A program made the translations under genes and the position numbers. This document shows positions 1,933-37,874 of a stretch of DNA of 64,000 nucleotides, piece after piece. The first letter of the stretch is position 1; each line of letters begins with the position of its first letter. The stretch is taken from assembly GCA_904063045.1 (NCBI GenBank), contig CAJFCJ010000023.1:248001-312000 (forward strand), in the 5' to 3' direction. This DNA is from Dimorphilus gyrociliatus (lineage: Eukaryota; Animalia; Annelida). The notes beneath the pieces were generated by a model, which saw nothing but the letters and a program-made list of their open reading frames with translations, had not been told where the DNA came from and searched no databases.

Positions 1933-4900
1933 GATTCTAGATTAAAAATAGAAAGTTCTCATTCTAAAGACAAAGGGAATGTTATTGCTTAAAAATTTAA
2001 TGAATAGAAGAGATCAAAGCAAAAATTAAACTTTTTTCTGTAACGTATACAATTATTTCTCTTTCCCTATTGCGAAGAATATCTATTTACTTCATTGATG
2101 GTTTGATAAGACTTAAAATTGAACCGAAATTCCTATAACGGCTAACCAATGAACTAGCTGTTTATTTACTTTTAAATGTATTAGAAAACGACGATGTAGC
2201 TCAAATAATTAACAATAACGTGCTCGATAATTTGACCGAAATCAACGAACGATGATGCTTTCTAAAACAAAAGAATTGGATCGACTGTTAATGATTTTCG
2301 TCTCTATTATCAATATGCCATTAGCCTATGTTGCGAATCATTTAGCATTCTTAAAACTAAATAAATGTCAACTGTTAATGTTACTCATTAAAATTTGCCA
2401 GCTTCAATACAATTCCCTTGGCGAATTCAATACTTTTAAAAAAATTTGAAGCGGATTTGTTGTGATACCTCATCTGATTCTGCATATTGTGTTGATGTGA
2501 GCAAAATTACATTGAATGCTTCAATGATATTGAAAATGATAGCGTATCGAAGCTAAAAAATGGAACAAAGATACTGTGAGCGCAGCTTTTGATTGTGTCC
2601 AAAAATATAAATATGACAGCTTCTTATTCGCTGGTGTACGAGATGGCATTGGTGCAAAAATAAAGTAGCAACTGCCAAAGGAAATGCTTGTCAAAATTCA
2701 AAGGATGCTATTGTTACAAAGATTTTCTCCGATTTCCTTCCCTTAAAAACTGTGGTCTATAGGAGATGCTAGTGAAGTAGCATCATTCCTCAGTTAAAAT
2801 ATGAATGCAAAGATAAAGTCGTTACAAATGTAATAGCAAGATTTGATGATGACAATAATAGAATATAAATTATAGTTACATATTAACAATTAAATATTAT
2901 TATTACTTTCCGAATTGTAAATATTTATTTTATTTCTTTAAAAAACACATAGAAAGAAGATAACGATGACTAATAGTAATAACTAGTTCTTTTTCCATTT
3001 GATGTTGCTTTCTATTGTTTTGTTGTTTAGAGAGATTTGTTTACGCTTTAATTAAAAAACACAAATATTCATAGAGTTTCACGAAAGGAATAATATATGG
3101 TATTTTTAATATACATATCATTGTATAAATGTAGTCGTGTTAATGAATATGAACGTAAATCTAGTTGAATAAGGTTTTATTTTTAAATGAAATGTTAATA
3201 ATCATAATTAGTTATTTGAGTATTAAATTATATACAGTATATGTATTTCTGTAGCTTAAATTCAACATAATTTATATTAGTGTAGAATGATTATAGCTTA
3301 TATTACTTGTTTTATTTAGGTTGTAGAAGTGCATAAGTAGTCTGATAATATGAGCAATAACACTGATTCTTTATAGTTTATATTAAGAAAATTAATTAAA
3401 ATATTTTGTATTATTTCTGGCCATGATATGTTTGACAAAACATTTATAATACTCTATACATAGAAAAGTATATTTACATCATATTTAATACAATATCAGT
3501 TTTTTAATCAAGTTGATCTTGTTATGTGTAGAATGATGAATATTTTTACATTTACGCAGAATTTGTTAACATTGATCTAACATTGTGACAAAAAACGCTT
3601 TAAGCCAAATATTTACAACTAGGATCATTCTCTTTTCTTTTATTATTGTAAAGAAACGCCTATAAGTATTAGCACCTTCTTTGTTCTTTACAGATAATAG
3701 ATTTCAATGAATAAACTCTGTTGTTAAGTCTTTATTTTCATTTCGGAAAGTTTGCAAGAAATTCATCTGTTTAGTTCTCTCGTTCCAGATTTATGAATGG
3801 CGTTTAGACTATATCATACCGACCAGTTAGTTATGAATGGTAATTGCATTCTCCTTGTTTTTTCCTTTTATAAAAACGTGTTTAAAAATATTTTTGCCTG
3901 ATCAGGGAAATGGAGCTTTCCGTAAAACTCTTAATCATTAACTTGACAAGAGGAAATGATACATTCTGAAGAGAGGAAAGAATAGGCTGCTTTTGAAATT
4001 ATTTTCTCTATCTTTTCCTGTTGGTGAAATTTCGTATAGTGGTTCAAGTCTTAACATGACTTGAAAAGTTAATGGAAGTCGCCAATATTTGGCTCAAATA
4101 CAAGCTAATTGGGAGAGTAAAATGATCAAAGTTCTCTTTTAGTCTATTTCTAGTTGTATTATTTCTTTTTTATTAAAGTAAAATTAGTATTGACTAAATC
4201 TCGATCAATACCTGATGCAGTGTGCATTTCCTGAAATATATCAAGGATTTAAAGCCGCTTAAAGCATACACTTTATCACAATTGCATATTTAAAGGTTAG
4301 ATTAGATTGTAAAATATATATGTATATATATATATACAGAATATACGTATAATGGATAACTATCAATTTTTTGTTCAATCTTGACTTCTCTATTCTTTGA
4401 GGCAAAGTTGTAGGGTGATTTAAAAATTTAATAAAATTACAGAGAAGACTTTTTTAAAGAAGAATCAATTGGTTATCTAGAAAAGAATCTTTTACATCCC
4501 TATAGTTAGGATGAAAACAATAGAGATTTAGTATTAATTTACCATTACTTACAAGAGAAGGTAAGAAATATGGCAATATCAGTAAAAGAAATTTTATACA
4601 AGAAAAAAATAGATTACCCATATAGGAATAATATAAGAATATTACATATATACTGTATGCAGTATATTTAATATACTCTATAGGTATATATATATATATA
4701 TATATGATTTATTGCGTGAAACTTTGTACATGTCCCTTGAAAATAGACATGTAGAATACAATAGATAATGAATAATAAATAATTTAATAAGATTACTTTT
4801 TTTATGATTATCGTATTTTCTTTTTTACCTTGTTTTTTTATACTTTATAGAAATTCTGAAAGATATAAGATATAAACGCAACGAATCTAAATATTCATTG

Positions 4901-30678: not shown

Positions 30679-33110
30679 GTATTATTGTACAACGGAAAAA
30701 TGAGCGAATAAATATTTGTTGACATGTTCCCGCAACGTCAAACACACGTATAAGACATTATATACATAAACTCAAAAAATAGAAAAGTTTTAAAGTAATC
30801 AACTGGAATTGTTTACACCTTTTTATATTTCATTCATCTTGACTTTTCTTCCGTATATAAATAATTGCCTTATAAGTTATTAATAATAGTATTTGCTTGT
30901 TGTTGTTGTTTTAAAGCTTATTTCATTAACTTTTCTCAACTTTATTACATTCATTTTTCATTTACAACTACGAAAAATGGCAATGCTAACATTAATAACT
31001 TATATAGATGTACAGAATATATTAGTATATATACACATACGTTTACAAACACACCCACAGTTTTATAACTCTATGCAATAGTATTAAAAACTCTTTTTTT
31101 TATTACTACACGTGTTACTCTTTAATTATAGAAAATGACAAAAATGACTCTAAATTGAGTTTTATTGTTTACTTGACTGATGAGATGAAAAAGATAAAAA
31201 ATAAAGTAAGGTTAATCGACTCAAAATTTTTTGACTTATTTTAATACACCACGTGACTTTTCTTTATCCGTCATTATAGAGAATTAACGTCAACTAGGGC
31301 AAAACGATGTGGGAAAGCATCAGTAACATTTTACGTCACACTGGGAAGATAAAGGAAAATTGAAGATTTTCTTTACTGTTCAATTACTCTCTTATATAAT
31401 TTTATTTTCAATTTTTTTGTTACTGCCATCTGCCGAAAAGATTTGACTAGTTAATTTATGTAACTAGTTCGCTCTATCAATCCACCTTGAGAAAGTCAAC
31501 CCGATTGGGATAAATAAAAAATAAACAAAGCATACAACAAGGCTATACGGTATAGAAACATATATTGAAGTTTTCTTAAAACAATTGGACGACAGAAGGC
31601 GCTAGAGTAAAATTTAGAGGATATTTCTTTATACATAATTTTCTTTTCATTACCTTCTTTTTCATCTCAATTAATGAATTGATTGAGTTTGACCTAAATA
31701 TATACTTTTTAACACTTGATAATAAAAGAATAGAATAGGATGAATAACTTTTGAGATAAATATTAATGAACGAATTTGAACAAATGAAATTTATTAGATA
31801 TTAAATAATTGAATGGCAAAAAAAAACTAATAAAAGGAGTGAAAGAAGGAATAAATGAAGGAAAAAAGAAAAAGAAAATGATCGTAAGGGGTATGGGACG
31901 AATAGATGGAGGAAACTGTTCGATTATTCTTGGGAGATAGCACTTAAATGTGTTGTATATAAAACTATTCGCCCATTTTTTTGTAACGCTAAACACCCCA
32001 ATGGAAATAAAGATGCTTATTGTTACCAAGAGTAGGCCAACACTATAGAAAAAATAGACGGCTAATAATCCGATGCAATGATGCAGAAATACGGCTCAGT
32101 AGGCCTATGTAACTAATACATCCACTCGTATTGCCTCGTTTCCGGTAGTCTAAAAGCCAATGTAAAAATATGTATAAATAAAAAAGGAAAGCAACTTATT
32201 GTTAGTAGCCTGGGAAACGGGACGTCCAAAAAGGAAGGGATGTCTCCCCAGGCTCGTTCATTATGCTCTGCTAGGCGTCGAAAAAGAGACGCTGGTAATC
32301 GGGCGCACTTTTCTTTGTGAGTAAACTCAGTCATCGTTACACATGCGGCTAATGCGATTGTATCCTGTTTTTTAACTTGTTTCCTAGCAATAATCAACAG
32401 TAAAACAGTATAAAAGTATTTTTCAACCCTTTTTATTGTGTCACCATGCTTTAATAATTACGTAAGGAGGTTATCCTCAAAATTATCCTCTTTATGAAAA
32501 CGCCAGTTCCGCCATCTCGCGGACACGCTGATTTAACTTATATAGCGTTGTTTTTGACTTTTTCAACCCGAGGATAAATAAGCTAGGGAATTTCGTTATA
32601 CGAGTGAAAAGCTGCAAGCAGAATACAATTAGTCTGCATGTAAAAAGTATCGATATTGTAAATGAACTGTAATGCTCTTATTTTCTCCCAATACCGGTAC
32701 ACAGACTATGCGAATAGTACGGAAAATCTAAGTAACACTTTGAAGAGAGTCGTTCATGTGGAAAGCTGTTGTCGGAAAGATCTGAACAAGTTTTTAGGTA
32801 GACTAGGGAGAAGAAAAGAATCAACGAGTGTTATATATCTAATACAAAGTATATCTCTTTCTACTTCTAATGTAAATACTTAATTAAAATTAACTGTATA
32901 TTTTCATTTTTCATTATTTAAATTCATTAGACATATTAATTAAAGAATGAAGAGGTTTTCATTTTCTTTGGAACAAAACACTCTCTTTTGAACAGTTTAA
33001 ATAAACTTGAACACTGATTCAATTCATTCAAATGATAATACGTAAGTTTTGTTTCTTTAACAATATGTACAACCGATTGGATGAAACTGTATGCAGTAGA
33101 TATATTTTTG

Positions 33111-36100
33111 CTAACAAAGCTCATTTACTCTTAAGCTCTTATAATGATAAATATTACTCTTATTCCATACGTAGAAAGCTGCAACTCCTGCACTTGTTCT
33201 CTTTACTTCGTTCAACGAAATATTCTTTAAAACTTGTTCCGCTTTTGAAATAACATCTGCATTCACCTTTGGTATTTCTATACTTCGTATTTTACTAAAT
33301 AGACCATCGGAACTAACTACGGAAATGTACTTTTGGCAATTTGTCCATTCGCTAGTATTCGATTCGGGTATTCCTAAGATCAATAATGTCGATTTCATAA
33401 CTGCGTGTACAATTTCTGGAGGTTGTCTATATTTTCTAATTTCGCTTATACATCTCGGATCAATCTTTAATATTTTCAATTGAATTCTTTTTATCTTATC
33501 CATCGTTCGTAACATTTCCATTCCAATTGTTATTTCTTTACTTAGTTCTTTCATATATTCTTTACCAGAAGTCATTTTTATAAGTTCTTTTAATAAATCG
33601 TAATTCGTTTCGGCAATTGCCTTTAAAAGGTCTATATAATGCGAAGGAAGGAATAGTTAGTCTACCTTGTATAGATTGATAATCTACTTGATTTGTTCAT
33701 CTTACCTGATTTTAATTTGGCAACGTTTACAGAAGAATCTTTAGCAGTTGAAGGTCTACTTTTATCTGGTATATTTACAGTATTTTTATCGAATAATTGT
33801 CTCGAAACTGAGGATTTAGCGCTAGTTTCTCTTTGCGAAGTATCTCTAGCACTTTTAACTGATCGTGTTTTGGACGAAGGAAACTGTATAAATAAAGGAA
33901 CGAGGTTGTTTTACAAAAGATGAACTTAATTAATCCTTACAGGAGAAGCCGTTTGCAATCTATTTAAAGTAGATTTACTTTTGTCCGCGGTGTTTTTCCT
34001 ACAAGAATCCTTTAAATTCGGCTTCTTTTCAGTCGTTTTTTTTTCCACTAGACTTACCTAAAGAGAGTTTTTATTAATATGTTACTTCTCCTAAAAGAAT
34101 AAGTATGAACATCTTACTTTGTTATTTGTAAAACCAACTTTTTCACCTTCCCTAAACACACCGTCAACTTCATTCATTTCCATAAAATCTGTTACACCAA
34201 GGATTTCATCCATTTTACTTTCCCAATCTTCTTCCCTATTCCTCGGGCTATTCTTTTCGTTGTTGTCGTAATTATTTGATGATTCATCTTTTAGAGAAAA
34301 AGAGTAATAAATAAGTTATAAATCATAAATGTAAGATATGATATATATGAATTTATAAAAGAAGTAATTAATGTTTACCTTCTTTCTTTTTGACTTCTTT
34401 TTCGTCTAATACAAGAAAATAGCAAATGTAAACAGGTAACAGTTGACTTCCGTCAGGCACTTGATCGACAAAAACAGTCAATTTATAAATCCCAGGCGAT
34501 GGAAACTTGATAGAAATTGTTGAATAATCCATTTCGTTTTTGCAGTATGCACAATTATTAATAATATTTTCAGCGCCGTACAAATCCCAATGTAAAAGCT
34601 CTAAATTAAATTTACAAGCTTTTGACTTATAAATTTTAAATTGCGTTGATTTCTTATTAAGTTTTTGAAATGATTGAAAATCCGATTCAGTCCTTAATCC
34701 AAATTCAATAAATTTTTCCTGTATACCAATTTTCCTGTTAAATTCATGTGGAAATTTTATATTCCTTTTCGGTTTAGTTTTACAATTGATAATATATGAA
34801 CAAACTGGATCCATTTCCTTATCAATTTCATCTCTCTTCTTTGCGTAAATGTTTAGGGCGTATTCACCTTCTTGCGGAGCGAATACACGAATACTAGCTC
34901 TACCATTCTCGAAAGTAGACAATAGACTATTTTTTAGGTCTTCCAAACCAATTTGTTGGTTTTCCAATTTAGAAAATATATTGAATATTTTATCATCACC
35001 GTCGAAATTGATCTCGGCATATCCATCTTCATCTGTATCTATCATACCAATTGTTGGCGATATATTTGAGAAATTAAATTTTTCCATATCAGAATTTGGA
35101 CCCAATTCCGTTTTTGCAGTTATTGGGAATGAGTGAATGTTTACATCATCAGTCTTTCTTGTATAATGCAATTCATAGTCGCATGCACTTTTATAGACGC
35201 TCCGTTGTAGAATTTCATCTTTTTCGTTACGAAGGAATATAGCTAATTTATAAATACCACTCTTGGGAAGTCTCAATCGAATAACGACCCTAAATCTGAG
35301 CCTATCTTGGAATAGTGTTACATATGATTGTAGATCAACATTTGGTTCCGCTTTTATTGTAGAATTCTCCCCAGAATTGCTATCATTTAAAAGGCAAATT
35401 TGGTGTCTAAATGAGACTGGAATATCGCTATTTGTCCCTATAAATATCTCTAGTTTTGGATCAGATGTCTCGATAATTCGTTTTGGATGAGAGATAATTG
35501 TTAAGCCAGCGTCGAAGAAAGGTTGCCTAAGACAAACCATTTCCTCAAACTCGTTAAAAGTAACTTTCCTAGCTAAGAGTTGAAATTTTGGATTATCGGG
35601 TAAATGTGTGTAAATAAGCTCCTCCGGATTGGTAAGAAAGTAGTAATCATTGTAATTGTAATATGTTTTATATTCAGCTTTTTCATCAAATTTTTCTTCC
35701 ATCTCCTCCAATGTTCCATCATCATTTATAAGGCACCATGCTTTATCGTATTTAACTCCGTGAGAACAGGCAAATTGTGGATTGCACAGGTACCAATTAT
35801 CTTTGATGCGAACTACATTCCATCTACTTTTAATATATTTATCATCATTCTTTCTATTCGAATCCGTATCTGTTCTAATACGACCTTCGCAAATAAAACA
35901 CTTCAAATTAGCTAAGCTAGAGGAGAGAAAGGAAAAAACCATAAAAAGAGCAAAATAAGGAGCAATCTTAAATAATATAAGCGGCATTAAACTCACCTGC
36001 ATAATCTTTGGAAGACTGTACTATAATCTGTTTCTTCTCTATATAATTGATTGAGATAGTATGATACGGATTTCTCTATTTTATTATCTAACGATAATTC

Positions 36101-36525
36101 GGGTAGTTTTAAAGATGATAACCATCTGAACAATATCCTAACTTTTTTAAGTTCATCAAAACAAACTTTTGTTAAATATTTAACAAGATTCTCTTCTGAT
36201 TTCTCCAAAATATCTTTATCTGTTGTAGAAACTGCAATATTATCAATAACGTCGAAACAGCAGTCTTTTAACACGTCGGTTTTCTTTACTTTTAAAGGGA
36301 ACGGCTGATCTTTATAAATCTATAACAAGGGGGGAAAAAACAATATCTCGTAACGTAAACAGTTAAATAGGAAGAGGAACAAAAATGTTAACAAACATTA
36401 TCTGGATAAATGGTGGCCCATTCTTCATTGGCAATTCGTAGTTTCATATTATCCGGAAATCCCATTAACTCAAATAATGAAGCTTCTCTATCATCGCCCT
36501 GATTTGTTGATTGTTCACTAGCCAT
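33111..36525 (-). CDS. Hillarin/kyphoscoliosis-peptidase (KY)-like protein: transglutaminase-like fold, repeated Ig-like segments, low-complexity linker, C-terminal dynein-stalk MTBD-like domain; 991 aa, 7 exons
   Basis: Exons 36525-36397 (MASEQ...), 36319-35997, 35916-34379, 34287-34118, 34057-33941, 33883-33706 and 33631-33111; all GT-AG and phase-consistent (2976 nt). Motifs DYSTVFQRLCSLANLKCFICEG, RWNVVRIKDNWYLCNPQF and YYFLTNPEELIYTHLPDNPKFQLL are hillarin/KY-type. C-terminal ISEIRKYRQPPEIVHAVMKSTLLILG...W...VKRTSAGVAAFYVW is MTBD-like. Confidence 0.92.
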
Positions 36526-37874
36526 AATACCCTTTGAATAATTCAATAAAAGATTATTGAAGTTTGAGTGAAAATGCTCAATTTGTTCTTTTTATCTATC
36601 GTTTAAAGTGGTTAGATATAAGCGATAAAAGATATCTCTTTAATATATTTTTAATATTATATTAAGCAGATTCTTACAAACATATCACAGTAGCAATGAT
36701 ATATGTTTAGTAGGGTAGTTGAACAACGCAAAGAGAGGAGATGGAAAGACATATATAGACGAGGAAAGAAGAAAATGAGATCAGGTTTAATATGGTTTAT
36801 TTAATGTTAATAAGGTAGGAAATGGGAAGATATGAAAACGTATTTTACGTTTGAGTAAAGAGGGCTTTATACCTTTATATGGTATTCTCAAAATATTTGC
36901 AGTATCTACCGTTAATAGTAAAAGATTTTTTTTTATATTCCAACTCCTTAAACGTAAAGAATAATCTCTAAAAAAAGATCCCAAACTAGTAAATTAACAA
37001 GTGCCTTAATCGTTTCTTCCTTGTAGGATGTCTTTGTACTTTCATAGATAAATACATGATCTTATTGACTTGAGAAGACAGAATAACGTAAACATGTCTA
37101 GTTTACCTTTGCGCTTATTGATTTTTAAACGAAAAATGATAAAGGGAAAATGGAAACTGGTAAAGAATTTACATAAATTTTAGGTTTATTATCATAATAG
37201 AAAAAGTTGGTTTACTTACGGAAATTGAATAAATGTTATCTTGAATAGTTGAAGAATTAAAAGTTAATAATTCATTCCTACTTCTCCAACTAAGCACGTG
37301 TCAAACTGAAAAAATTTCATGGGAATTGGAAAGGAAATTGCGATTGTGAGCGTAGATTTCAGACTTTGTGTACTCTTGGATTTATGTAATGTTAGATTGC
37401 GAATGGTTGACGCAAACCTTCTCTGAGCCCGCGATAGGTTTAGTTCTTACGTAAAAGAAAAAGTTAAAGCGTTAATTCTTTGATGTCGAGTGAAAGTTTT
37501 TCTTGTTGAGAACAAAAGATTGTACTTTTTAACTCAATTGACACTTTTTCTCCTATTGAATTAACTAGTCCTACCTATTTTCATCAGTCGAGTCAATACA
37601 ATTCTATAGTTAGTATATATCGTTAATATTACTGCTTTAAGCTTAATTTTATGATTTTAAATTGAATAAAAACCGATAAAATAGTATTTTATACTTTCCG
37701 CTATCTTCTTATCTATAGGCTAAATGAAGTTTGAAGTTTCCCACAGAAAAATGTTAATATACCTCAACTTGAAGATCTGAATAGCGAATCCATGCGTAGA
37801 CCTATGTATATATATATTTTAAGGAATATCGTCCTATACATTCACTTCCCAAACTCGTGGGAGACAATACTATT

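What the first reader, a model, noticed from the sequence alone, without database searches (positions are those of the whole stretch)
33111..36525. Catalytically dead transglutaminase-fold protein fused to a dynein microtubule-binding-domain-like module
Seen: at the three positions where KY/transglutaminase-like enzymes carry Cys (xCxGYA), His (HAWN) and Asp (LxD), this protein has EETDYS, SRWN and LCN, so the whole triad is lost. After a charged low-complexity linker, the last exon encodes ISEIRKYRQPPEIVHAVMKSTLLILG..EWTNCQKYI...KIRSIEIPKVNADVISKAEQVLKNISLNEVKRTSAGVAAFYVWNK. Known: this follows the dynein heavy-chain stalk MTBD pattern (PP..V..V..av..ll...W......S.Aa..l..W). Inference: a motor-less scaffold that may tether septin/cytokinesis- or muscle-type hillarin/KY functions to microtubules. 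Similar architectures may exist unstudied in other invertebrates.
Basis: partly seen in the sequence, partly recalled or inferred. Interest (0 to 1): 0.7.

Follow-up and report, generated by a model that had tools for sequence, protein, structure and literature searches.

The report
Dead transglutaminase-like protein with dynein-type tip
One spliced gene of the annelid Dimorphilus gyrociliatus encodes a 991-residue protein that joins an inactive KY/hillarin-type transglutaminase-like module to a true homologue of the microtubule-binding tip of the dynein motor, and the same undescribed design recurs in corals, molluscs, brachiopods and other annelids.

Summary
One spliced transcript contig (six GT..AG introns, minus strand) joins all seven coding exons into a 2,976-nt frame of 991 aa. 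The public model DgyrCDS13043 (763 aa) reads into an intron and lacks the last 232 aa.

- **N-terminal part:** it has a transglutaminase-like fold (Z 16.8 to Chlamydomonas FAP246, Z 11.0 to TglA). The Cys/His/Asp positions hold E139, S181 and N196. Three Ig-like_KY domains follow.
- **Linker:** 155 aa, first half acidic, second half basic and Ser/Thr-rich.
- **Last exon:** it is homologous to the dynein microtubule-binding domain (MTBD). Alone it gives E 3e-6; a family profile gives 6e-12. The AlphaFold2 (AF2) model has pLDDT 95 and Z 16.5 to the mouse dynein MTBD. Only a short stalk stub is present.
- **Constraint:** this exon is the most conserved part against a related species (82% identity, dN/dS about 0.06).

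The domain defines a family of at least 393 cluster representatives. None of the 150 best hits is of dynein size. It is usually C-terminal and mostly follows KY-like modules. It also occurs in tandem arrays and with CARD, CLCA/VWA, EGF or TPR partners.

Microtubule binding is inferred, not shown. Only 2 of 5 validated yeast dynein contact residues are kept. I found no description in the held literature. This scan's earlier notes hold nothing on it.

The parts
36873..37110 (-). 5'UTR exon (upper end approximate), followed by a 341-nt 5'UTR intron at 36532-36872
   Evidence: The 238-nt loose end of the transcript contig at 36535 matches window ~36877 onward. The intron has GT..AG ends and there are in-frame stops upstream of the ATG.
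36397..36531 (-). Exon 1, start codon at 36525-36523 (aa 1-43)
   Evidence: Contig piece 36397-36535 and joint 36319/36397.
35997..36319 (-). Exon 2 (aa 44-151): N-terminal helices of the transglutaminase-like domain. E139 (36034-36032) sits at the catalytic Cys position.
34379..35916 (-). Exon 3 (aa 151-664): rest of the transglutaminase-like core and three Ig-like_KY domains. S181 (35828-35826) is at the His position and N196 (35783-35781) at the Asp position.
35661..36247 (-). Transglutaminase-like pseudo-enzyme core (aa ~68-236; spans intron 2)
   Evidence: phmmer from the Pinctada relative gives E 1.2e-8. The AF2 model has pLDDT 88.2. VIA-align gives Z 16.8 to FAP246 and Z 11.0 to TglA, with transglutaminases and cysteine proteases at Z ~6. 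There is no Pfam PF01841 hit for this protein itself.
35145..35555 (-). Ig-like_KY domain 1 (aa 272-408)
   Evidence: PF23265, 73.8 bits, E 1.9e-20.
34746..35144 (-). Ig-like_KY domain 2 (aa 409-541)
   Evidence: PF23265, 55.7 bits, E 7e-15.
34380..34745 (-). Ig-like_KY domain 3 (aa 542-663)
   Evidence: PF23265, 30.6 bits, E 4.1e-7.
34118..34287 (-). Exon 4: acidic first part of the linker
   Evidence: (joint with cut +5).
33941..34057 (-). Exon 5: linker. The public model DgyrCDS13043 fails to splice here and ends 4 codons into the intron.
33706..33883 (-). Exon 6: basic, Ser/Thr-rich part of the linker (absent from the public model)
32981..33631 (-). Exon 7 with the 3'UTR. Coding aa 819-991, stop codon at 33113-33111.
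   Evidence: Contig piece 32981-33631.
33114..33631 (-). Dynein-MTBD-homologous domain. It has three short N-terminal helices, a 25-residue CC1-like helix, the globular helices (invariant E, PP, W, S-x-G-x-A-x-F-x-x-W) and a 25-residue H6/CC2-like helix that ends the protein.
   Evidence: It is 82% identical to the orthologous exon in L001, with dN/dS about 0.06.

Best explanation
This is one gene (7 coding exons plus a 5'UTR exon, minus strand). It encodes a 991-aa cytoplasmic, non-catalytic scaffold.

Architecture:
- The N-terminal two thirds are a KY/hillarin-type module. This is a transglutaminase-like fold with all three catalytic positions replaced (E139, S181, N196), followed by three Ig-like_KY domains. 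In this class such modules act as binding surfaces, not enzymes.
- A 155-aa disordered linker follows. Its second half is strongly basic and Ser/Thr-rich.
- The C-terminal 170 residues are homologous to the microtubule-binding domain at the tip of the dynein stalk. Only about 25 residues of each stalk helix remain, and three extra N-terminal helices are added. I infer that the coiled-coil register is therefore fixed, whereas in dynein it switches affinity.

Proposed mechanism: the C-terminal domain, helped by the adjacent basic linker, docks constitutively on microtubules, possibly ciliary ones. The dead transglutaminase/Ig part holds a cytoskeletal partner. The protein is thus a motor-less tether.

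Shown: gene structure, expression as one spliced RNA, homology and fold of both modules, loss of the triad, purifying selection, and conservation of the architecture from corals to annelids.

Inferred: microtubule binding, the fixed register, and the identity of the partner.
For: Gene:
- One 3,354-nt contig skips six CT..AC (minus-strand GT..AG) introns and joins all exons.
- The joined frame is 2,976 nt with one terminal stop.
- Stops lie upstream of the ATG.

Transglutaminase side:
- Ig-like_KY matches at 1e-42, with three domains each above the Pfam cut-off.
- The family profile hits FAP246 at 4e-19 and TglA at 8.6e-6.
- The model scores Z 16.8 and Z 11.0 to these two.
- In 82 relatives the Cys column never holds Cys, the His column holds His once, and the Asp column holds Asp in 17 of 82.

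MTBD side.

Same fusion in single gene models elsewhere:
- Haliotis.
- Pinctada, Patella, Lingula, Helobdella and Owenia, plus two Dimorphilus paralogues.
- 43 of 50 relatives retrieved with the Pinctada N-terminal query (49 mollusc or unnamed, 1 coral), and separately 3 coral proteins.

Constraint: the orthologous locus L001 keeps all exons in order. Identity is 82% for exon 7, 66-71% for exons 1-3 and 53-55% for the linker. NG86 dN/dS is about 0.06 for exon 7.

Microtubule leaning:
- Residues equivalent to yeast R3124 and R3201 are kept.
- The globular part carries net charge +5.
- The linker half beside it has about +12 net charge by my count of the sequence printed.
- Relatives of the domain occur as tandem arrays behind a CFAP97/Hemingway domain.
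- The nearest solved relative of the N-terminal module, FAP246, sits in the ciliary central apparatus.
Against: - No binding data exist.
- Three of five validated yeast dynein contact residues are not basic here: K3117 aligns to P, R3152 to T, and R3159 to S.
- Across the family only the R3124 position is conserved (84% K/R), and the median net charge of the globular part is 0.
- The family has its own invariant residues (a His after the PP, a D-Q pair). These could mark a different ligand.
- The domain also ends proteins with CARD, CLCA/VWA and EGF modules. This fits a general adaptor as well as a microtubule anchor.
- Pfam PF12777 and PF01841 do not reach any reportable score on the Dimorphilus protein itself.
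- The run that gave the spliced contig is not on record as RNA. Its RNA nature is inferred from the precise removal of six introns.
Confidence: 0.5

Rival explanations
1. The architecture is as described, but the MTBD-like fold has been re-used for a ligand other than microtubules. It would be a generic C-terminal protein-protein adaptor, and the protein would have nothing to do with microtubules.
For: - Most validated dynein-microtubule salt-bridge positions are not conserved in the family, and the median net charge is 0.
- Family-specific invariant residues exist.
- The partners are varied: CARD, CLCA/VWA, EGF, EF-hand and TPR.
- A non-dynein chain of the isolated Chlamydomonas radial spoke 1 (7jtk_C, Z 12.1) shares the fold.
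Against: - The basic H3 contacts are also not conserved between bona fide dyneins, for example in Dictyostelium (PMC7042235).
- The Dimorphilus copy itself is basic (+5), keeps two contact arginines and is preceded by a basic Ser/Thr-rich stretch.
- Tandem arrays of the globular part resemble multivalent microtubule-associated proteins and can follow a CFAP97 domain.
- Other non-dynein fold-mates lie in microtubule assemblies: 9fqr_Xl and 9ya2_L.
Confidence: 0.35
2. The transglutaminase-like module keeps some catalytic activity through other residues, so the protein is an enzyme targeted by the C-terminal domain.
For: The fold is intact and confidently modelled. An Asn at the Asp position could still form hydrogen bonds.
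Against: - No Cys lies near the N-terminus of the nucleophile helix.
- The His position is Ser here and in the orthologue.
- None of the 82 relatives has Cys in that column.
- Precedent, from my own knowledge: the Cyk3-type domains act without the nucleophile.
Confidence: 0.05
3. The last two exons belong to a separate gene, or the contig that joins them is an assembly chimera.
For: The public annotation ends after exon 5. Gene callers on the orthologous contig also called the last exon as a separate 146-aa gene.
Against: - One contig joins exons 5-6-7 at canonical splice sites with the reading frame kept.
- No stop-free alternative start is needed.
- The same order of exons is kept in L001.
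- Single gene models in many phyla carry the same fusion.
- The public model ends only by reading 4 codons into an intron.
Confidence: 0.03

Closest known systems
Dynein heavy chain microtubule-binding domain (Pfam PF12777 'MT'; e.g. mouse DYNC1H1 in 3err/6rzb, human DYNC2H1 in 4rh7, yeast Dyn1 in 6kiq)
   Same: - Homologous sequence: E 3e-6 for the exon alone, 6e-12 for the family profile.
- Same helical fold: Z 16.5, rmsd 2.7 over 145 residues.
- Same conserved landmarks: E-I-R, PP, L-L-G, W, and S-x-x-x-x-x-x-x-x-W.
- The base of CC1 and CC2 is present.
   Different: - No AAA+ ring and no long antiparallel stalk. The protein ends about 17 residues after the H6 tryptophan.
- Three extra N-terminal helices are present.
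- Only 2 of 5 validated contact arginines/lysines are kept.
- Family-specific His and D-Q residues are present.
- It is below Pfam's reporting level.
KY (kyphoscoliosis peptidase) / hillarin / LTD-1 / Cyk3 transglutaminase-like proteins
   Same: It has a transglutaminase-like core followed by Ig-like_KY domains (PF23265). Automatic names of the relatives are 'hillarin-like', 'ltd-1-like' and 'kyphoscoliosis peptidase'.
   Different: - No LIM domain.
- All three triad positions are replaced.
- A C-terminal MTBD homologue is present. To my knowledge this is not part of vertebrate KY, Drosophila hillarin or yeast Cyk3. I could not retrieve those sequences to check.
Chlamydomonas FAP246 (C1b arm of the ciliary central apparatus, 7n6g/7sqc)
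   Same: It is the nearest solved structure to the N-terminal module: Z 16.8 over 202 residues, profile E 4e-19. The match includes the segment up to the W-Q-L-L motif.
   Different: FAP246 keeps the His and Asp. It carries guanylate-kinase and EF-hand domains (PMC9113940). It has no MTBD-like domain that I could see.
Uncharacterised mollusc, brachiopod, annelid and coral proteins with the same architecture (e.g. Saccostrea echinata P0171 and Ylistrum balloti P0197, which already carry precomputed PF12777+PF23265; Dimorphilus DgyrCDS14711)
   Same: They have the same order of modules, the same dead triad columns and the same C-terminal placement of the domain.
   Different: These are database entries only. 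I found no paper on them. The Dimorphilus gene in this window is mis-annotated without the domain.

Membership tests
Dynein MTBD (PF12777) | Significant sequence similarity to dynein stalk-tip sequences | tested here: met
   phmmer gives E 3.3e-6 to DYNC2H1 and all 14 hits are dyneins. The family profile gives 6.3e-12, and the 60 hits shown (of 72) are all dyneins. Pfam's own model gives no reportable hit on this copy, but it does on tandem-array relatives at 90-118 bits.
Dynein MTBD (PF12777) | Globular helical bundle (H1-H6) fold | tested here: met
   AF2 pLDDT is 95.2. Foldseek gives TM 0.74 to 6rzb_C. VIA-align gives Z 16.5 (3err), 16.4 (5ayh) and 14.0 (6rzb).
Dynein MTBD (PF12777) | Carried on a long antiparallel CC1/CC2 stalk between AAA4 and AAA5 of a motor | tested here: not met
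   The protein is 991 aa with no AAA domain. About 25 residues of CC1-like helix precede the domain, and the chain ends about 17 residues after the H6 tryptophan. In the family the domain ends a median of 11 residues from the C-terminus.
Dynein MTBD (PF12777) | Basic residues that form salt bridges with tubulin (yeast K3117, R3124, R3152, R3159, R3201) | tested here: inconclusive
   Two of five are kept in this protein (R68, R147), and one of five is conserved in the family. The H3 pair also varies among true dyneins.
Dynein MTBD (PF12777) | Binds microtubules | not testable with these tools
   This needs co-sedimentation, TIRF or cryo-EM.
KY / hillarin-type transglutaminase-like proteins | Transglutaminase-like (papain-like) core fold | tested here: met
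   The model has pLDDT 88.2. It scores Z 16.8 to FAP246 and Z 11.0 to TglA, with factor XIII, TG2, TG3 and cysteine proteases at Z ~6. Pfam PF01841 is not detected in this copy but is detected in 22 of 43 relatives.
KY / hillarin-type transglutaminase-like proteins | Cys-His-Asp catalytic triad | tested here: not met
   The positions hold E139, S181 and N196. The His and Asp columns are fixed by FAP246 and TglA. The Cys column is fixed by motif position.
KY / hillarin-type transglutaminase-like proteins | Ig-like_KY domains (PF23265) after the core | tested here: met
   Three domains score 73.8, 55.7 and 30.6 bits against a cut-off of 27.
Hillarin / LTD-1 proper | N-terminal LIM domain | tested here: not met
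   No LIM hit appears in any exon at E up to 10.

The most novel reading that the evidence does not exclude
The C-terminal domain belongs to an unrecognised, ancient class of motor-independent microtubule-binding modules that share ancestry with the dynein stalk tip. The class is found from a glaucophyte alga to corals, spiralians and invertebrate chordates. It is used singly as a C-terminal anchor or in tandem arrays. On this reading the Dimorphilus protein is a ciliary or axoneme-associated pseudo-enzyme tether that uses it with a locked, constitutive affinity.
Probability: 0.3. Interest if true: 0.85.

Novelty: new variant of a known kind. Interest (0 to 1): 0.65.

Why it matters
As far as I know and could find in the held literature, the dynein MTBD is described only as part of the motor. 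Its affinity there is set by sliding of the stalk helices.

A large family of non-motor proteins carries the same domain on a short, closed stub. This would give a natural experiment on what the domain does without the motor. It would also supply a new type of microtubule anchor, if binding holds.

It would further suggest what the poorly understood KY/hillarin pseudo-enzymes are attached to in animals that have this version.

In practical terms, it shows that the public Dimorphilus model is truncated by 232 residues and misses the domain.

Tried and rejected
- **Pfam on the last exon:** no family at E up to 10. Homology had to come from PDB sequences and a family profile.
- **Word-indexed search with the Dimorphilus exon 3:** only 3 proteins, because the annelid copy is divergent.
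- **Looking for a catalytically active KY reference:** two further searches from the Pinctada and coral relatives returned no vertebrate KY. The Cys column is therefore supported only by motif position. FAP246 alignments start just after it.
- **eLife dynein-MTBD paper:** it gave no usable contact list. The yeast paper did.
- **Model coordinates:** they are not exposed. I could not measure the coiled-coil register or surface charge of the stub.
- **Literature searches:** searches for hillarin/W180, KY plus dynein, 'MTBD-like', PF12777 and 'MTBD fold' found nothing on this architecture.
- **Toxoplasma conoid paper:** it does not comment on the MTBD-like fold of 9ya2_L.
- **Paralogues:** there is no second copy of the domain in the 64-kb window.
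- **Earlier notes of this scan:** the notes near this place concern other genes.
- **Joined model:** the joined 991-aa model was not sent to any database, family or fold tool. Exons were searched by window reference, and the public protein P0001 served for exons 1-5. The joined sequence was assembled only inside local scripts. There it was used to check the frame and was compared by local tblastn with the window and locus L001.
Full report
**Organism and locus.** The window is from the annelid Dimorphilus gyrociliatus. Exon 3 of the gene is 100% identical to the public protein DgyrCDS13043. The span 33111-36525 is the stop-to-ATG extent of a minus-strand gene in AT-rich DNA (about 32% G+C).

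**Gene model.**
- One public run holds the stretch. Its single 3,354-nt contig lies on 32981-36535 and skips six segments of 57-91 nt. Each segment has CT..AC ends, that is GT..AG introns on the minus strand. A 238-nt loose end matches the window from about 36877. This defines a further 5'UTR exon and a 341-nt intron at 36532-36872.
- The coding exons are 36397-36525, 35997-36319, 34379-35916, 34118-34287, 33941-34057, 33706-33883 and 33111-33631.
- Joined in a local script, they give 2,976 nt, or 991 codons, with one terminal stop. In-frame stops lie upstream of the ATG.
- The public model shares the first 759 residues. It then reads four codons into intron 5 and stops. It therefore lacks exons 6 and 7.
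- The run is not recorded as RNA. I infer that the contig is cDNA from the exact removal of six introns.

**N-terminal module.**
- Pfam finds only Ig-like_KY (PF23265, 1e-42). Three separate domains score 73.8, 55.7 and 30.6 bits.
- The region before them (aa ~68-236) is not recognised by Pfam's Transglut_core. It is homologous to the corresponding region of a Pinctada relative that is recognised.
- A 47-sequence profile of this region hits Chlamydomonas FAP246 at 4e-19 and S. pyogenes TglA at 8.6e-6.
- An AF2 model of aa 43-290 (pLDDT 88.2) aligns to FAP246 at Z 16.8 (202 residues) and to TglA at Z 11.0. Classical transglutaminases, bacterial cysteine proteases and arylamine N-acetyltransferases follow at Z ~6. 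The transglutaminase-like fold is therefore real.
- FAP246 and TglA keep His two residues before the conserved Trp and Asp four residues after the second Trp. The Dimorphilus protein has Ser181 and Asn196 there.
- The nucleophile position, three residues before the Y-S that opens the long helix, is Glu139. No Cys lies within ten residues upstream.
- In 82 aligned relatives the Cys column never contains Cys, the His column contains His once, and the Asp column contains Asp in 17.
- The related-species orthologue keeps the same Ser and Asn. The triad loss is a family trait, not a local accident.

**Linker.** Residues 664-818 (exons 4-6) are low-complexity, with 23 Ser, 20 Lys and 15 Asn. The first half is acidic. 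The second half is basic and rich in Ser/Thr, with a net charge of roughly +12 over 80 residues by my count of the sequence printed.

**C-terminal domain.**
- The last exon, searched alone by reference, matches only dynein heavy chains in the PDB. The best is human dynein-2 at E 3.3e-6 over residues 21-166.
- A full HMMER scan of 1.84 billion representatives found 393 proteins at E <= 1e-3, of which 97 are at <= 1e-10. None of the best 150 is of dynein size.
- A 61-sequence alignment has invariant E, P and W, and near-invariant Y, L-G, S-x-G-x-A-x-F-x-x-W.
- Its profile hits 72 PDB sequences. The 60 shown are all dynein stalk/MTBD chains of cytoplasmic, IFT and axonemal classes, down to 6.3e-12.
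- The AF2 model is very confident (pLDDT 95.2, pTM 0.89).
- Foldseek's first 17 hits are all dynein stalk/MTBD structures and nearly all of the rest are too; the one non-dynein chain I noted is 7jtk_C at rank 18.
- VIA-align gives Z 16.5 (rmsd 2.7, 145 residues) to mouse dynein 3263-3410, and Z 13-16 to six other dynein MTBD structures. The ESM Atlas shape search agrees.
- The aligned range covers model residues 25-175. It includes a 25-residue CC1-like helix and a 25-residue H6/CC2-like helix that ends the protein.
- Residues 1-24 form extra short helices. There is no long stalk and no AAA domain.

**Does it bind microtubules?** This is not shown.
- The yeast study lists five basic residues forming salt bridges with tubulin. 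Each reduces affinity more than two-fold when mutated (PMC7042235).
- I mapped them through the alignment. K3117 aligns to Pro (family: Gln in 61%). R3124 aligns to Arg (family 84% K/R). R3152 aligns to Thr. R3159 aligns to Ser (family: Gly in 54%). R3201 aligns to Arg (family 10%, but the preceding position is 66% K/R).
- The Dimorphilus globular part has net charge +5. The family median is 0.
- The evidence therefore allows binding through the H1/H6 face plus the basic linker. It equally allows a changed ligand.

**Family and distribution.**
- Of 43 long relatives, 32 carry Ig-like_KY and 22 carry Transglut_core.
- Named members come from bivalves, gastropods, Lingula, Helobdella and Owenia. 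Two further Dimorphilus genes (DgyrCDS14711, DgyrCDS14453) are also named members.
- Using the Pinctada N-terminal region as query, 43 of 50 relatives have the C-terminal domain. These are labelled 'hillarin-like', 'ltd-1-like' or 'kyphoscoliosis peptidase'. Three Montipora coral proteins have it too. The fusion therefore seems to predate the cnidarian-bilaterian split.
- The domain lies a median of 11 residues from the C-terminus.
- Other contexts exist:
  - arrays of three to five globular units, one behind a CFAP97/Hemingway domain;
  - a Cyanophora protein with DUF4062, NPHP3-like TPRs and three units;
  - amphioxus CLCA+VWA proteins;
  - a Saccoglossus EGF protein;
  - CARD proteins.
- Two relatives already carry a precomputed PF12777 label. 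The architecture is thus visible in databases, but I found no paper on it.

**Constraint.** A 22-kb contig from a related species (L001) has all exons in the same order. Protein identity is 66-71% for exons 1-3, 53-55% for the linker and 82% for exon 7. NG86 estimates are dN 0.099 / dS 1.68 for exon 7 and dN 0.167 / dS 1.94 for exon 3. dS is near saturation, so the ratios are rough. Both parts are under purifying selection, and the MTBD-like exon is the most constrained.

**Verdict.** I rate the tether mechanism at about 0.5 and a re-used adaptor fold at about 0.35. The architecture is a new variant of two known kinds. This gene is a mis-annotated member of a wide, unstudied family.

- Exons were searched one by one by window reference.
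- The joined 991-aa model was not sent to any database, family or fold tool. It was used only in local scripts for the frame check and local tblastn.
- Read laying was given 3,801 letters.

Noticed in passing
window 33937-33940 / 33941-34057: The public model DgyrCDS13043 (763 aa) misses the donor after exon 5. It ends with four intron-encoded residues and so loses the last 232 residues, including the MTBD-like domain.
   Followed up: yes
L001:707-1192: In the related species' contig, a second MTBD-like coding stretch lies about 3 kb upstream of the orthologue. It is 43% identical to aa 818-979 and was called as a 179-aa gene. No counterpart exists in the 64-kb window.
   Followed up: partly
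P0056, P0148, P0119, P0143, P0103, P0005: Some proteins are built of 2-5 tandem copies of the globular MTBD-like unit alone. One lies behind a CFAP97/Hemingway domain. One from Cyanophora has NPHP3-like TPRs. The Pinctada KY-like protein carries three copies.
   Followed up: partly
PDB 7jtk_C 440-592; 9fqr_Xl 1326-1495; 9ya2_L 1207-1457: Non-dynein chains in the Chlamydomonas radial spoke 1, the bovine sperm 96-nm repeat and the Toxoplasma intraconoidal microtubule share the MTBD-like fold (Z 12.1, 10.7, 10.1). I could not name the proteins or test sequence homology. The Toxoplasma paper does not mention it.
   Followed up: partly
PDB 7n6g_6E (FAP246) 350-685: The central-apparatus protein FAP246 contains a KY-type transglutaminase-like domain with His and Asp kept. 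The structure paper I read describes only its guanylate-kinase and EF-hand parts.
   Followed up: partly
window 36532-36872: A 341-nt intron in the 5'UTR ends 7 nt before the start codon. The 5'UTR exon starts near 37110.
   Followed up: yes
window 1-64000: Only six ORFs of 130 aa or more occur in the whole 64-kb window. The 1.5-kb exon 3 of this gene is by far the longest open stretch.
   Followed up: no
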